13,636 bases of DNA, taken from Octopus sinensis (taxonomy: Eukaryota). Numbering within the stretch: the first letter of the stretch is position 1; each line of letters opens with the position of its first letter. The translations under genes and the position numbers were made by a program. Below, piece by piece: positions 924-9,938 of the stretch. The notes beneath the pieces are model-generated. The model was given only the letters and a program-made list of their open reading frames with translations. It had not been told where the DNA came from and searched no databases. The stretch lies in assembly GCF_006345805.1 (NCBI RefSeq), contig NW_021826020.1:1-13636 (forward strand), in the 5' to 3' direction.

Positions 924-1218
924 TACATACATACATCTATGCATGTATTTATATATAAATACAAGCACACATGCATTCATATACGCATACATGCATTCAT
1001 ACATACATTCATGCACATACATACACATATAAACCAACACAAATATTCCCTTAATTCATATATATATATATATATATATATACAGACGCATACATGTACA
1101 CATACACATACATAGATTCGTATATATATATATATATATATATACACATACAGATTCCTATATACTTACATATATGCATATACTTACACATATATTCATA
1201 CATTCATTCATACATACA
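924..1218. repeat. Compound (TACA)/(TA)/(CA)/(TTCA) microsatellite
   Basis: Read directly. It accounts for the 900..1115 ORF and the first part of the 1174..1404 ORF. Confidence 0.95.
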
Positions 1219-1219
1219 A

Positions 1220-2660
1220 TTGTAATTGAAAGCCGTCTGATTGTTTCCGATGTTATAAATATTTTAAGCGGAATACTCCAAGGAGTCAGTTTGTCTATAC
1301 TTCTGTTTATTTTGGCTCAAAAACCACTGTCATTTTTTTTCCAAAAACTCCACCGATTATGTGCTAAAGTTTGCAACAACAAGAGATATCAATCTAACTC
1401 CTAATGTCTTGGGTGGACAATCTAAAGATCTATACTCGGAATATTTACAATACTGAGAAACAGCTGGATTTAGTAACATGTTCTGCTGTTGTACGGATGG
1501 GTTTGGGCCAAACGAAATTTTCTTATTTGATAGTTGAAAGCTGAAAGCTTGTTTGTTTCCTCAAACACGAAGTTTCGCATTAATGTTTTTGCTATGGTTT
1601 CTGTTCCACAAACACCAAGATATTGATTAAGATATATTATACGAACGCACTAAAAACAAAGATTGGTCGAAGAATATTATTACAGAGCTTGAAAAAAAGA
1701 CATGACAGAAACGTTGATTGGATTTCCTTTAAAGACGAGTGTCCCAAATAGATATTTGACTTCTCTATAGAGGAAATACACTCCACAGACATTAAAATCT
1801 CTAAGATGCTGGCATTAACTGCACACCTCAACTAAATCAGTGCTATTGGCAGACCCTATTGCAGAAGAAATAGGAAAGAAAAGGAAGGTTTAAGATCTAT
1901 GTTGATAGTCTTTGAGTTTTGTGCGATATCACTTTGACGAAATCTGCTAAACATTGGCAGCGAAAATAAATACATCATTTAAATACTAAAAGGTAGAGAG
2001 GCGCATTCGTCAAGAATCATTCAATTTCCGATGATTGCTCCTGCGATTTCCAGTGACTGACGTACCTCAAAAAAGAGATCTTAAAGAGAAACGTTCAGCG
2101 TACCACAAATAGGTTATGAATGGCTAAGTTTTCTTTAAACTTGTGGATGATAATAGTGTTAACATGGAGTGGTTCTTTTCTTGAAATCACGACCGTTTCA
2201 TCAAAACACATTTCGTTATGATTTTAGCAATTTTTGCAAAAGTAAGAATGAATTAATAAATACCAAATGAAGAAAATAGACAGGGAGACACTTAAACACG
2301 CAAGATGGAGCCTAAAATGTTGATAACGACACTTTTATTTGGAGGCTATTACACATGTGACCAGCAGCTTCCCCAAAATGTTATAATCACGACATGATAT
2401 TGTTGCTGAACCAATATACAGAACCGTCTGCAAGAAAGGGTCTTTCGTAAAATCTTCCTTCATATTTTTCTGATATTTAACGAATTTTTCCAGGAAATTA
2501 TAGAAAGAGGAAAATGACAAGGAATACGTAACCTGCGAATATATCACCAGGTTACAGAGAATACAATCTTCATGTGAATTATTTATAACTATGAATGAGC
2601 GTTCAGGATATCCTTGAAGTATAGGTACTCACATCAACATTTGGGGTTCGATATAAATAC
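1220..2660 (+). mobile_element. Old, heavily decayed Tx1/L1-like LINE, 3' half (RT to C-terminal zinc-binding region)
   Basis: Translation SGILQGVSLSILLFILAQKPL resembles the L1/Tx1 motif RGVRQGCPLSxLLFxLxxEPL. WVDN (~1410) falls where YADD is expected. DWSKNIITELEKK (~1660) resembles the post-thumb W..I..KL.KK segment. FIWRLLHM*P (~2335-2365) resembles FLWRLLHxxLP. The motifs are collinear but full of stops and frameshifts, so the ends are approximate. Confidence 0.6.
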
Positions 2661-4339: not shown

Positions 4340-4630
4340 TACACGCTCATATATTTAATATGTATATATATATTTACTATGAATATACAATATGTATATA
4401 CAAATACACTTACATATGAATCGACAAATGTGTGTGTACGCACGCACACACACACTGTATATATGTATATATATATATATATATATCTATTATATAATAT
4501 ATATATATATATATTATATATATACACATTTATCACACACGCACCACACACACACAACACACGCACACACACACACACACACACACACCCACATATATAT
4601 ATATTATATATATATATATATCATATATAT
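4340..4630. repeat. Compound (TA)/(CA)/(TG) microsatellite region
   Basis: Read directly. It accounts for the 4256, 4291 and 4392 ORFs. Confidence 0.95.
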
Positions 4631-4659
4631 AGGAAAAAAGCAACAAGAATAGATTAAAA

Positions 4660-4747
4660 TCTCGGTACGATCGTTTCGTACGAGGACATCTTTAATAAGC
4701 TACAAAAAATGCAGTGAATACAGATGGCTCGTACTCGTCAGCCGAAA
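4660..4747 (-). ncRNA. Type I hammerhead ribozyme motif, complete (minus strand, left arm)
   Basis: Stem I TTTCGG (4747-4742) / CCGAGA (4665-4660); core CTGACGA (4741-4735); stem II GTACGAG (4734-4728) / CTCGTAC (4684-4678), a perfect 7 bp, extended by CATCT/AGATG; GAAA (4677-4674); palindromic stem III ACGATCGT; triplet GUA, with predicted cleavage between 4666 and 4665. Confidence 0.85.
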
Positions 4748-5059
4748 AAACATCAGAGAATTCCCAAACATCAAAAGGGGTAGATACAAAAGAGGTTGTA
4801 GGATTAACTGCATTGAAGAAAGTTCGATTCGTGGAGATCCGATGAAAGGTTTTAAACCTATAGAATTTATGCATGTTTACATATAGCTCATATTGGATAT
4901 TTGATCAAGTTATATGAAGAACTATATGTAGACATGCATAAATTCTATAGGTTTAAAACCTTTCATCGGATCTCCACGAATCGAACATCTTCAATGCAGT
5001 TAATCCTACAACCTCTTTTGTATCTACCCCTTTTGATGTTTGGGAATTCTCTGATGTTT

Positions 5060-5146
5060 TTTCGGCTGACGAGTACAAGCCATCTGTATTCACTGCATTT
5101 TTTGTAGCTTATTAAAATGTCCTCGTACGAAACGATCGTACCGAGA
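5060..5146 (+). ncRNA. Type I hammerhead ribozyme motif (plus strand, right arm)
   Basis: Stem I TTTCGG (5060-5065) / CCGAGA (5141-5146); core CTGACGA (5066-5072); stem II GTACAAG (5073-5079) / CTCGTAC (5122-5128), with an A5077.C5124 mismatch and a 42-nt loop; GAAA (5129-5132); stem III ACGATCGT; predicted cleavage after A5140. Confidence 0.82.
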
Positions 5147-5293
5147 TTTTATCCATTCTGTGTGCTTTTTTCGTATTTGTAATCACCCCACTTGTCGTAT
5201 GGTTAACACCATATAGATTTCCGATGCATCCTAGTTAAGGACCATATTCATGTGAATTCTTTAGAATTCACTAGAATCTCAATTACTTAACCG

Positions 5294-5334
5294 TATATAT
5301 ATATATATTCATATATATATATATATATATATAT
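5294..5334. repeat. (TA)n microsatellite
   Basis: Read directly. Confidence 0.95.
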
Positions 5335-5693
5335 GTAATGGATGGATGTATAAAATAGATGAAGGTTTGGACTTAATCAAAGGACATACTAAGTATGTCG
5401 ACCTGCTGGAAATAGCAATCAAGACTCCAATTTAAATCGCCGTGAGTCCAAATATTTGAATGTATGATGAGGGATTGTCTTAGCCCGTTTACCTTCGGAC
5501 GGTTTATTTTTGTAGTTATTATCAGTGTCTTTTTCATCGATTTAAATAAGAGTTTTGACTGTTATTTTCGGAAGGTATTCATACTTACTATGTTCTTTGA
5601 TCAACTTAAATCCTTCAGCTATTTAATGCTTCTTGGGCCTGCAATCGCCTATATTATTGATTCTGTTATTATCATTATTAAATTGTTACACTG

Positions 5694-5771: not shown

Positions 5772-5871
5772 TTGATGATGATGACGACGATGACGATGAT
5801 ATAATAATAATAATATAATAATAAATAATAATAAATAATAATAATAAATAATAATAATAATAATAATAATA
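5694..5871. repeat. Compound (GAT)/(AAT)/(GAC) trinucleotide array, 5' flank of the LINE
   Basis: Read directly. It produces the poly-I, poly-M and poly-L ORFs. Confidence 0.97.
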
Positions 5872-7752
5872 ATGCGCAGAATCTCAGCACCACCGCATGG
5901 ATTGACTATAAAAGGCCTTCGACAGTATACCGCATCCATGAATCTTGAGATCGCTGGACATCTTCAAAATTTCCCCTGTGATTTCAAACTTCCTGAAGCA
6001 CAATATGTCGTTGTGGAATACGAATCTCAATTATACCACTCTAATGGAGTACTTGCTTCAGAAAATATAAACATCAACTGTGGAATTTTTCAAGGTGACT
6101 CACTTTCACCTTTAATATTTGCATAGCCTAATACCCCTTACAAGTGAATTAAACAGAACAGGATATGGGTATAAAATTGCCAATAAAAAAATAAGCCATC
6201 TACTTTATATGGATGACTTAAAACTTTATGGTAAAGACAATAATGAACTTGAAGGCTATTGCGCACCGTGAAAGCATTCAGCGATGACATCGGGATGGAG
6301 TTTGGACTTGAGAAGTGTGCCAAGGCCACTTTCCAGAAGGGAAAGTGAAGACCACAAATTCAGTCGTGTTAGATGTTGACACAGTCATAAGAGAGCTTGA
6401 GCAAGAACAAACATACAAATATTTAGGGATAAATGAAGGCTCTGGTATTCAGCATGCAAGCATGAAAGAGAAGATCAGGAAGGAATGTTATAGGAGAGTT
6501 CGTGCAGTCCTGAAATCTGAACTAAATGCACGTAACAAGGTGTTAGCTATAAATTCCTTAGCAGTTCCAGTTGTTACTATATAGCTACAAGTGTTTGAAC
6601 TGAATATGAGTGAAGTAAAGAATATAGATAGGAAAATACGCAAGCTGCTGAGTTGTAATAGGATGTACCACCCAAAGGCAGACGTAGATCGCCTTTACCT
6701 TCCCAGAGCCCAAGGAGGTCGAGGCCTGATCCAATTTGAACTAGCTTACAAAACAACCACAATTGGACTGACCAAATATCTCGAAATATCGAATGACTGG
6801 ATGCTAAAGCTCGTGGAAAATCACGAGGGGCGAAAGAAGCTTCATTCTATCATAAAGGAAAGCAAAAAATTTGCTATTGATCTCGTGCAGGATACCCAAA
6901 CTGAACAACCGGAGGGAAGTACGGCAACTATTGTTGCAAAGAAGGTGAAAATGATGGCAACGAAAAAAGCGCACGAGCAATTGGCTGATAGGTGGGAGGA
7001 GAAACCTCTGCACGGCAAATATTGGACCCGCAGCAAACAAGCTGATGTTGACCAGAAGCAAACCCATCAGTGGCTACGGAGCTCAGGGCTAAAAGCAGAG
7101 AGCGAAGGTTTCATCCTGGCTGCTCAAGATCAAAGCCTATTAACCCGGAACTACCAGGCCAATGTGATGAAAAATGGAGCAGACCCAAAATGCCGATTCT
7201 GCAACGACATGATTGAAACAGTGGACCATCTAATCTGGATGTAAAGTCTTAGCACCAGTGGAGTAAATTAAGACATGACAGAGTTGACCAATATCTACAC
7301 TGGCTAATAAGTCGGCATTACAATATAAAAAACTGCCGACAAGTGGTATAATCCCACCCTGAGGCTGTAACTGAAGGAGAAAATGTAAACATTCTGTGGG
7401 ACTTTCCAGTACATACAGACCGAACCATCAAGGCCAATGAACCAGATATTGTTGTGAAAGACCAAAACAATAAAGTTTGCTTATTGATTGACATGAGCAT
7501 CCCCTGTGATCATAATATCTCAGCGAAAGAGTTTGACAAGCTCAGAAAATATAAAGACCTACTCATTGAAATTGAGAAAATGTGGCATCTCAAGGCGGTT
7601 ACAATACCAGTGATCGTAGGAGCACTAGGAATGATCAAGAAGGAACCGAAAATTATATGAGAATGATCCCTGGCTTACCATCCCTGCAAGAAGTGCAAAA
7701 GATTGTCTTAACTGGTACATCACATGTATTGAGAAGAGCATTGTCGATGTGA
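5872..7752 (+). pseudogene. Frameshifted RT-zinc knuckle-RLE ORF of the LINE (track ORFs 5872, 6315, 6591 and 7454 are pieces of it)
   Basis: About ten frameshifts, mostly 1-bp deletions, and one TGG>TGA stop (5938-5940). The longest intact stretch is 6591-7244. Confidence 0.88.
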
Positions 7753-9780: not shown

Positions 9781-9938
9781 TACACCCGGATATGTCTCCC
9801 TACACCCGGATATGTCTCCCTACACCCGGATATGTCTCCCTACACCCGGATATGTCTCCCTACACCTGGATATGTCTCCCTACACCCGGATATGTCTCCC
9901 TACACCCGGATATGTCCCCCTACACCCGGATATGTCTC
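9781..9938. repeat. 20-bp minisatellite (TACACCCGGATATGTCTCCC) x7.9
   Basis: Seven full units plus 18 nt, with only two substitutions (unit 5 C>T, unit 7 T>C). Confidence 0.98.

What the first reader, a model, noticed from the sequence alone, without database searches (positions are those of the whole stretch)
4629..5176. Fold-back element with a complete hammerhead ribozyme on each strand (ambisense, outward-cleaving pair)
Seen in sequence: two ~230-bp inverted arms, ~98% identical, around a 35-bp spacer. Each arm contains every hammerhead element in order (6-bp stem I, CUGACGA, 7-bp stem II, GAAA, palindromic stem III ACGAUCGU, GUA triplet), at 4660-4747 on the minus strand and 5060-5146 on the plus strand. 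Predicted cuts at 4666/4665 and 5140/5141 bracket almost the whole hairpin. Established: type I hammerheads with short palindromic stem III are typical of Penelope-like element terminal repeats and retrozymes, where they usually occur as direct tandem repeats that cleave as dimers; PLEs can also form inverted terminal structures. Inference: this is a non-coding, head-to-head, ribozyme-terminated fold-back. A transcript from either strand would be a ~230-bp dsRNA rod with a self-cleaving 3' end, which resembles the layout of viroid-like RNAs with ribozymes in both polarities. It may be a distinct non-autonomous mobile family mobilised by PLE RT. I cannot confirm novelty.
Basis: partly seen in the sequence, partly recalled or inferred. 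Interest (0 to 1): 0.88.

Follow-up and report, generated by a model that had tools for sequence, protein, structure and literature searches.

The report
Head-to-head Penelope-like retroelement insertion in octopus
The "ambisense ribozyme fold-back" is two 5'-truncated tail ends of one octopus Penelope-like retrotransposon, inserted head to head in a (TA)n microsatellite and each carrying the element's usual hammerhead motif; this layout is already described for the class, so the locus is ordinary.

Summary
The sequence observation holds. There are inverted arms at 4629-4889 and 4919-5176. A complete type I hammerhead motif lies at 4660-4747 (-) and 5060-5146 (+), and Rfam Hammerhead_1 aligns end to end at exactly those coordinates, though below its threshold (21.4 and 23.4 bits; cut-off 34).

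The interpretation as a distinct non-coding fold-back family does not hold. The genome is a 2.7-Gb eukaryote, apparently Octopus sinensis. Each arm is the 3' end of a retroelement at least 4.7 kb long and present in hundreds of copies. [quoted passage not shown] It inserts in (TA)n. These are the published hallmarks of the Hydra clade of Penelope-like elements (PLEs).

In the loci I fetched, 20 independent head-to-head pairs occur and no tail-to-tail pairs. Truncation points vary and the 5' ends abut. The window's junction is unique in the genome. The literature describes this inverted 5'-truncated partner as typical of PLEs, and a purified PLE protein primes from both cut DNA strands in vitro.

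The hammerhead is the dimer-dependent kind. One hairpin transcript holds only one sense copy, buried in a -426 kcal/mol duplex.

One regularity may deserve attention: in all 19 resolved pairs, exactly one arm carries a 117-nt 3' "tail".

The parts
4593..4628 (.). (AT)n microsatellite flanking the composite on the left; the preferred PLE target
   Evidence: Tandem Repeats Finder. Nearly all family copies are bounded by (TA)n.
4629..4921 (-). Left copy: 5'-truncated 3' end of the PLE (about 293 nt), 'short' 3' end ...TTGCTTTTTTCCTAT abutting (AT)n
   Evidence: Maps to positions about 2390-2682 of my mapping reference (the 3' 2.8 kb of the element) at 93-96% identity.
4660..4747 (-). Type I hammerhead motif, identical to the family consensus; predicted cut between 4666 and 4665
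   Evidence: RF00163 at 21.4 bits, E=0.0026, model positions 1-45. Consensus comparison.
4919..4921 (.). Junction of the two 5' ends: 3-nt microhomology GAA shared by both copies
   Evidence: Read directly. Other pairs show overlaps or gaps of -7 to +8 bp.
4919..5293 (+). Right copy: 5'-truncated 3' end of the same PLE family (375 nt), 'long' form ending ...CTTAACCG
   Evidence: Maps to mapping-reference positions 2422-2799 at 95.5% identity. Long-form ends are aligned.
5060..5146 (+). Type I hammerhead motif with two private stem II mutations; predicted cut between 5140 and 5141
   Evidence: RF00163 at 23.4 bits, E=5.7e-4. Private changes seen against 57 copies.
5177..5293 (+). 117-nt 3' 'tail', present on this arm only (sequence between the two alternative 3' ends of the family)
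5294..5334 (.). (TA)n microsatellite flanking the composite on the right

Best explanation
The locus is one dead composite insertion of a Penelope-like retroelement (PLE, Hydra clade) into a (TA)n microsatellite of an octopus genome.

Inferred mechanism: the element's GIY-YIG nuclease cut both DNA strands. Each exposed 3'-OH primed reverse transcription near the 3' end of element RNA. One cDNA started at the 'short' site, 37 nt past the hammerhead cut site. The other started at the 'long' site, 154 nt past it. Both cDNAs stopped early, after about 290 and 375 nt. Their ends were joined through a 3-nt microhomology. This leaves two 3' ends pointing outward and two truncated 5' ends meeting in the middle.

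Each arm carries a hammerhead simply because the family has one dimer-type type I hammerhead about 40 nt before its 3' end. The 'ambisense pair' is a by-product and not a selected design.

Shown here: family membership, element structure, recurrence and orientation bias of head-to-head pairs, uniqueness of the junction, and the hammerhead motif. Inferred: the two-ended priming itself. It rests on published in vitro behaviour of another PLE.
For: 1. The arm is a high-copy family: 859 first-look candidates, with 45 scored matches, nearly all at 94-100% identity.

2. Walking upstream through other copies gives an element of at least 4.7 kb. [quoted passage not shown] A 1.4-kb 3' UTR follows and holds the hammerhead.

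3. These features, together with (TA)n targeting and a mollusc host, are what PMC8557442 section 11 lists for the Hydra clade.

4. Copies are 5'-truncated at many different points.

5. There are 20 unique head-to-head pairs and no tail-to-tail pairs in the fetched loci. Junction gaps are mostly -7 to +8 bp.

6. In pairs with long overlaps, the two arms are each other's closest relatives. L011 is 100%, L082 99.6% and L058 99.4%, and 0-8% of other copies are as close.

7. The window's junction occurs once in the genome.

8. [quoted passage not shown] 9. Cofolding two motif copies gives the double hammerhead with an 8-bp intermolecular ACGAUCGU helix III: -58.8 kcal/mol against 2 x -26.4.
Against: The window's own arms are only 95.4% identical and are not closer to each other than to other copies. 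For this particular pair, a single event is therefore inferred from the pattern and not shown directly.

RT and GIY-YIG Pfam scores are below the curated cut-offs, and no PLE-specific profile was available. I never recovered a demonstrably full-length copy or an upstream pseudo-LTR.

The hammerhead is below Rfam's gathering score, shows no covariation within this young family, and no cleavage data exist. Genome searches score only the best 40 candidates, so counts are samples and not a census.
Confidence: 0.85

Rival explanations
1. One reading: a distinct non-autonomous fold-back family, ribozyme-terminated on both strands and mobilised by PLE RT, with viroid-like ambisense self-cleaving transcripts.
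For: The inverted arms and a hammerhead motif on each strand are real. Head-to-head copies recur in the genome. Two composites are locally duplicated in tandem.
Against: The junction is unique, and every other pair has different truncation points. The arms are pieces of an autonomous element. The element ends lie 37 and 154 nt beyond the cut sites, not at them. The hammerhead is a dimer-type motif with one sense copy per transcript, and it is buried in a -426 kcal/mol duplex.
Confidence: 0.03
2. Two independent insertions of the same family, in opposite orientation, into one (TA)n microsatellite hotspot.
For: The family targets (TA)n. The window's arms are 4.6% diverged and are not each other's nearest relatives.
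Against: No (TA)n lies between the two 5' ends; they overlap by 3 nt. The orientation bias is 20 head-to-head against 0 tail-to-tail. The pairing is one short end plus one long end in 19 of 19 resolved pairs, including this one. Younger pairs have near-identical arms.
Confidence: 0.07
3. Assembly or fold-back-read artefact on a small unplaced contig.
For: The window is a 13.6-kb unplaced contig. PMC8557442 notes that such PLE structures trouble assemblies.
Against: The arms differ at about 12 positions, are of unequal length and have different 3' ends. A palindromic read artefact would be symmetric and identical. The same architecture is found at about 19 loci, most on chromosome-scale scaffolds.
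Confidence: 0.02
4. Secondary function, not exclusive of the main explanation: read-through transcription makes a roughly 260-bp perfect-hairpin RNA that is diced into small RNAs against this PLE family.
For: The very stable hairpin. Generic miRNA-precursor models score on it (MIR821 at 133 bits), which only reflects a long hairpin.
Against: All those Rfam scores are far below their cut-offs (MIR821: 133 against 249). There is no expression data. The locus is decaying like neutral DNA.
Confidence: 0.1

Closest known systems
PLE complex insertions with an inverted 5'-truncated copy adjacent to the 5' end (Evgen'ev & Arkhipova 2005 and Arkhipova 2006, as summarised in PMC8557442)
   Same: Outward-facing 3' ends, variable 5' truncation, abutting 5' ends, a tail at one end only, a hammerhead in the terminal repeat region, and a microsatellite target.
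   Different: Here both partners are short, so no ORF lies between them. The tail is 117 nt, not the published 30-40 bp.
Hydra clade of C-terminal EN+ PLEs (PMC8557442, section 11)
   Same: DKT in place of DKG; CxCX5C linker; CxxC and CxH around the catalytic E and N; only one Cys between GIY and YIG (no CCHH); (TA)n insertion; hammerhead present; aquatic invertebrate host, including Mollusca.
   Different: Described Hydra elements are generally under 3 kb. This family is at least 4.7 kb, owing to a roughly 250-aa N-rich linker and a 1.4-kb 3' UTR. RWR is seen where RWK is described (one copy only). No phylogeny was made.
Dimeric minimal-helix-III type I hammerheads of metazoan PLEs (Cervera & de la Pena 2014, PMC4209133; Forster et al. 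1988)
   Same: Type I topology, 6-bp helix I, short palindromic helix III (ACGAUCGU), and a predicted double-hammerhead dimer.
   Different: Helix II is extended to about 17 bp with internal loops (a 47-nt insert). The cleavage triplet is GUA, whereas the other hammerheads I printed from this genome have GUC or GUU. The Rfam score is below cut-off.
Metazoan non-LTR retrozymes (PMC7229834; bioRxiv 10.64898/2026.07.22.740005)
   Same: PLE-derived sequence with a type I hammerhead; non-coding as it stands in the window.
   Different: Retrozymes are direct tandem repeats that give two sense hammerheads and circular RNA. The window has inverted copies, so each transcript has one sense hammerhead.
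L1 twin-priming inversions (Ostertag & Kazazian 2001; from my own knowledge)
   Same: Both ends of a staggered break prime reverse transcription, giving an inverted, 5'-truncated insertion joined by microhomology.
   Different: Twin priming copies different segments of one RNA. Here both arms copy the same 3' segment.
Avsunviroidae and viroid-like circular RNAs with hammerheads in both polarities
   Same: A hammerhead sequence on each strand and a rod-like fold.
   Different: This is a DNA-encoded fragment of a retrotransposon. There is no evidence of circular RNA or RNA-RNA replication. In viroids each polarity's hammerhead is not simply the complement of the other's.

Membership tests
Hammerhead ribozyme, type I (Rfam RF00163) | Conserved core C3-U4-G5-A6-N7-G8-A9, G12-A13-A14, the A15.1-U16.1 pair, and H17 at the cleavage site, in type I order | tested here: met
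   CUGACGA ... GAAA ... ACGAUCGU-A|C on both arms. The CM alignment covers model positions 1-45.
Hammerhead ribozyme, type I (Rfam RF00163) | Score at or above Rfam's gathering threshold (34 bits) | tested here: not met
   21.4 and 23.4 bits; no hit at gathering threshold. The shortfall comes from the 47-nt loop II insert. Other hits in this genome with 103-108-nt spans score 25-34 bits.
Hammerhead ribozyme, type I (Rfam RF00163) | Helices supported by covariation | tested here: inconclusive
   57 copies are almost invariant in the motif (mean minor-allele fraction 0.5% against 1.5% in the rest of the arm). No compensatory changes are available.
Hammerhead ribozyme, type I (Rfam RF00163) | Self-cleavage | not testable with these tools
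   Needs in vitro transcription as monomer, dimer and hairpin, possibly with the element's protein (PMC11167929 found protein-assisted cleavage).
Penelope-like element, C-terminal EN+ (Hydra clade) | Single ORF with an RT followed by a C-terminal GIY-YIG nuclease | tested here: met
   L082:4107-6302 is one open frame running from the YxDD region and thumb to the GIY-YIG. RT motifs are in L084 and L086. RVT_1 E=2.9e-4 and GIY-YIG E=8.7e-4; both are below the Pfam cut-offs.
Penelope-like element, C-terminal EN+ (Hydra clade) | Hydra-specific motifs: DKT, CxCX5C linker, CxxC/CxH near E and N, no CCHH | tested here: met
   PADKTGNF; CNCRIKSKC, CQLC..E, N..CIH, and one Cys between IIY and YVG. Compared with the text of PMC8557442 section 11. 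RWK is seen as RWR in one copy.
Penelope-like element, C-terminal EN+ (Hydra clade) | RT groups with PLE/Hydra RTs in a phylogeny | not tested
The closest database proteins are unnamed octopus ORFs.
Penelope-like element, C-terminal EN+ (Hydra clade) | Insertion signatures: 5' truncation, inverted 5'-truncated partner, one-sided tail, microsatellite target | tested here: met
Penelope-like element, C-terminal EN+ (Hydra clade) | Pseudo-LTRs from partial tandem copies | tested here: inconclusive
   The longest copy in hand (L086) has (TA)n upstream, not a 3'-UTR copy. No full-length tandem was recovered.
Metazoan non-LTR retrozyme | Direct tandem repeats, each with a sense hammerhead, able to release a circular RNA | tested here: not met
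   The window has one sense motif per strand. Only the tandemly duplicated composites L087 and L088 elsewhere have two.
Foldback or MITE-type transposon | Many dispersed copies sharing the same terminal inverted repeats and internal structure | tested here: not met
   The junction is unique in the genome. Other pairs all differ in arm lengths.
Viroid-like RNA with ribozymes in both polarities | Circular RNA replicating through RNA intermediates | not testable with these tools
   No RNA data. The sequence is a fragment of a DNA-integrated retrotransposon.

The most novel reading that the evidence does not exclude
Head-to-head composites, especially ones duplicated in tandem such as G000:C2:30452000-30454300 (943-bp period, two sense hammerheads on each strand), could be processed into rod-shaped, hairpin-rich circular RNAs that carry hammerheads in both polarities. 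That would be a DNA-encoded, PLE-derived analogue of viroid-like RNAs.

A more modest version concerns mechanism. The strict 'one short end plus one long end' rule (19 of 19 pairs) may show that the two DNA ends are primed at two different sites of a single RNA held by one dimeric PLE particle.
Probability: 0.05. Interest if true: 0.75.

Novelty: new member of a known kind. Interest (0 to 1): 0.25.

Why it matters
It removes a false lead. A hammerhead on each strand of a fold-back looks exotic, but here it follows directly from how Penelope-like elements integrate. Similar hits in invertebrate genomes should be checked against PLE 3' ends first.

The locus and its relatives still have modest value for PLE mechanism. 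This family offers many young, cleanly resolved two-ended insertions with an unusually long (117-nt) one-sided tail. That is the in vivo footprint predicted by the recent in vitro finding that a PLE protein extends both cut strands from two internal RNA start sites.

Tried and rejected
1. Rfam at gathering threshold on the whole window and at E<=10 on 601 nt found no hammerhead. It found only generic long-hairpin matches to plant and animal miRNA models, far below their cut-offs, which I rejected as meaningless. Narrowing to about 105 nt recovered RF00163.

2. I first took the family for a roughly 320-bp unit, then 800 bp, then 1.4 kb of non-coding DNA, that is, a retrozyme- or SINE-like element. 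Each boundary turned out to be the truncation point of the reference copy used. This reading was rejected once the ORF was reached.

3. The '86-88% subfamily' (L023, L028, L030) was an artefact of (TA)n aligning to (TA)n.

4. Pfam on the long ORF gave nothing for the RT half. A word-based homology search with the nuclease region gave no hits. A PDB sequence search with the RT core gave none.

5. Snap-back self-priming as the origin of the pair was rejected. The partner arm covers the 3' terminus and not the junction-proximal segment, and the two ends differ (short against long). True short snap-backs do occur at the 5' ends of L022 and L025.

6. I looked for mini inverted partners next to 'solo' copies and found none.

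I fetched a few regions individually instead.

Full report
**1. What is in the sequence**

The window is contig C2491 of a 2.72-Gb, 13,516-contig eukaryotic assembly. It is rich in (TA)n, (CA)n and trinucleotide repeats. The best protein matches are named Octopus sinensis, and one sits on a contig of 207,928,902 bp, the exact length of this assembly's C2. I therefore take the genome to be O. sinensis.

The inverted repeat is real. Three ungapped blocks of 129, 68 and 38 nt are 97-99% complementary. Over the whole arms, 4629-4889 against 4919-5176 is 95.4% identical with three 1-nt gaps. As RNA the region folds into one hairpin of -426 kcal/mol, z = -54.

**2. The hammerheads**

Rfam found nothing at gathering thresholds. 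It also found no hammerhead when 601 nt were scanned at E<=10. With only about 105 nt submitted, so that filters are laxer, Hammerhead_1 (RF00163) aligns over its full 45 positions at 4660-4747 (-) with 21.4 bits, and at 5060-5146 (+) with 23.4 bits.

Both scores are below the 34-bit cut-off. The cost is a 47-nt insertion in loop II, which extends helix II to about 17 bp.

All core nucleotides are present: CUGACGA, GAAA, the A15.1-U16.1 pair, and GUA|C. Helix III is the 8-nt palindrome ACGAUCGU. As a monomer this is 3 bp closed by a 2-nt loop, which is not viable. Cofolding two copies gives the classical double hammerhead with an 8-bp intermolecular helix III and helices I formed in trans: -58.8 kcal/mol against 2 x -26.4. 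That is the architecture Cervera & de la Pena describe for metazoan PLE hammerheads, which 'may work as dimers' and cleave poorly in vitro (PMC4209133).

The left-arm motif equals the family consensus. The right-arm motif has two private stem II mutations. Among 57 copies the motif is about three times less variable than the rest of the arm (0.5% against 1.5%). It offers no covariation, so conservation is suggestive only.

The genome also holds textbook PLE-type hammerheads above Rfam's cut-off. One of them, L038, has the same GAAACGAUCGU helix III and a long loop II insert.

**3. What the arms are**

The arm is a high-copy repeat: 859 first-look candidates, with 45 scored matches, nearly all at 94-100% identity. 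Comparing copies, each apparent 5' boundary was only the truncation point of the reference copy I had chosen.

Walking upstream led to an ORF that ends 1.4 kb before the 3' end. The ORF contains the following:
- PADKTGNF.
- RT motifs, including FIQFDINNYYSSI, FEGKLW..MGSSDSAEV and GLYRDDALFVV.
- A thumb-like FLDITLDL...YPFRKEGEITSYVNKLSNHP segment.
- A roughly 250-residue asparagine-rich linker.
- CNCRIKSKC.
- A C-terminal GIY-YIG domain (IIYKCS...YVGCT...KQRLNNH) with CQLC and CIH flanking the catalytic E and N.

Pfam sees RVT_1 weakly but across profile positions 7-184 of 205 (E=2.9e-4), and GIY-YIG at E=8.7e-4. Both are below the curated cut-offs, which I state as a limitation.

The motif set is DKT in place of DKG, a CxCX5C linker, CxxC/CxH, no CCHH pair between GIY and YIG, insertion into (TA)n, hammerheads present, and molluscs among the hosts. 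This is what Craig et al. list for the Hydra clade of C-terminal EN+ PLEs (PMC8557442 section 11). PLEs are already annotated in O. vulgaris (PMC13282606).

The longest copy I could piece together spans at least 4.7 kb.

**4. Anatomy of the window's composite**

On a mapping reference of the element's last 2.8 kb, the hammerhead cut site is at 2645. Insertions end either at 2682 ('short'...TTGCTTTTTTCCTAT) or at 2799 ('long'...CTTAACCG). Both ends are followed by (TA)n.

In the window:
- The left copy (-) runs 4629-4921 and is short.
- The right copy (+) runs 4919-5293 and is long.

The two 5' ends share 3 nt (GAA, 4919-4921). (AT)n lies at 4593-4628 and (TA)n at 5294-5334.

**5. Is it a family or a by-product?**

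The 83-nt junction sequence occurs only once in the genome. All other hits match one half only.

Head-to-head pairs, however, are common. Among the loci in hand there are 20 unique pairs and no tail-to-tail pair. If the two orientations were equally likely, the chance of this is about 1e-6.

Arm lengths range from 112 nt (tail only, L081) to over 1.8 kb. Truncation points differ in every pair. Junctions overlap or gap by -7 to +8 bp in most. Of 25 loci from the unbiased arm search with resolved 5' ends, 11 are head-to-head.

In younger pairs with long overlaps the two arms are each other's nearest relatives. L011 is 100%, L082 99.6%, L058 99.4% and L024 98.8%, with 0-8% of other copies as close. 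This argues for one event from one RNA source. The window's pair is older (95.4%) and no longer shows this.

Two independent insertions are unlikely because no (TA)n lies between the 5' ends.

**6. Mechanism**

The literature describes exactly this. [quoted passage not shown] They also showed that it starts reverse transcription at two internal RNA sites whose interval is the tail, and that its hammerhead is dispensable for insertion in vitro and protein-assisted (PMC11167929).

Two-ended target-primed reverse transcription gives outward 3' ends and inward truncated 5' ends, as seen here. This step is inferred for the octopus element.

**7. A regularity worth noting**

In all 19 pairs where both 3' ends are resolved, one arm is short and the other long (with L057 and L067 for two of them). 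Solo copies are a mix (about 60% short). Chance would give about 0.48^19, or roughly 1e-6.

Two partners consist of the tail alone, at mapping-reference positions 2672/2674-2799 (L075, L081).

A simple reading is that both DNA ends prime on one RNA, or on one asymmetric dimeric particle, one at each start site. The published qualitative statement is that the tail is 'often at one end'. I could not check whether the strict rule has been reported.

**8.

A transcript of either strand holds one sense hammerhead of a dimer-dependent type. Its sequence is fully paired with the antisense copy in a 260-bp duplex. Efficient self-cleavage of the hairpin is therefore not expected.

The element ends are set by RT initiation 37 or 154 nt downstream of the cut site, not by ribozyme cleavage. 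The hairpin could still feed small-RNA pathways if transcribed. That is untested.

**9. Verdict**

Interest is low to moderate.

Noticed in passing
Related loci L006-L011, L017, L024, L027, L053/57, L058, L065, L067, L072, L075-L077, L081, L082, and window 4629-5293: In all 19 head-to-head pairs with both 3' ends resolved, one arm ends at the 'short' site and the other carries the 117-nt tail. There are no short+short or long+long pairs. In two pairs the partner is the tail alone.
   Followed up: partly
L087 = G000:C2:30452000-30454300: A whole head-to-head composite plus its (TA)n flank is duplicated in tandem: 943-bp period, a 926-bp stretch with at most 3 mismatches. This gives two sense hammerhead cores on each strand (+1125 and +2068; -551 and -1494). 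In principle that is a retrozyme-like arrangement.
   Followed up: partly
L088 = G000:C1:81168300-81171300: A second tandem duplication (1645-bp period) of a copy whose upstream inverted partner is an internal 103-nt fragment (mapping-reference positions 2249-2351) and not a 3' end.
   Followed up: no
L022 about 1300-1345; L025 (reverse strand) at its 5' end: Short perfect palindromes (about 12-22 bp) at the 5' truncation point of solo copies. They look like cDNA snap-back priming.
   Followed up: no
L082:4107-6302 (P0001), residues about 130-560: A very long asparagine-rich low-complexity linker lies between the RT and the GIY-YIG domain. NCBI names the related octopus ORFs after Dictyostelium proteins, presumably because of this composition.
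   Followed up: no
window 5441-5640 (and 5345-5439 inverted): An unrelated, very abundant repeat of about 195 bp (1265 first-look candidates, about 83-85% identity) lies just right of the composite, with a partial inverted copy next to it. It is SINE- or MITE-like.
   Followed up: partly
window 5848-7660 (+), also 1033-1404 (+): Fragments of a non-LTR (LINE) reverse transcriptase ORF (GIFQGDSLSPLIFA..., YKYLGI...). They are unrelated to the PLE.
   Followed up: no
window 9781-9938: A 20-bp tandem repeat (TACACCCGGATATGTCTCCC), 7.9 copies, 97% matches.
   Followed up: no
G000 loci L031-L050: The genome has many other PLE-type type I hammerheads. Eight of 74 scored candidates exceed Rfam's cut-off, e.g. 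GTACCTGAAGAGACCC..GGGTCGAAACATGTGTCGTAC. L038 and L047 have 103-108-nt versions with long loop II inserts.
   Followed up: partly
L003 (G000:C10450) and L004 (G000:C30): The two loci are identical over 3.2 kb in opposite orientation. The small contig looks like a haplotig or duplicate of the chromosome-scale scaffold.
   Followed up: no
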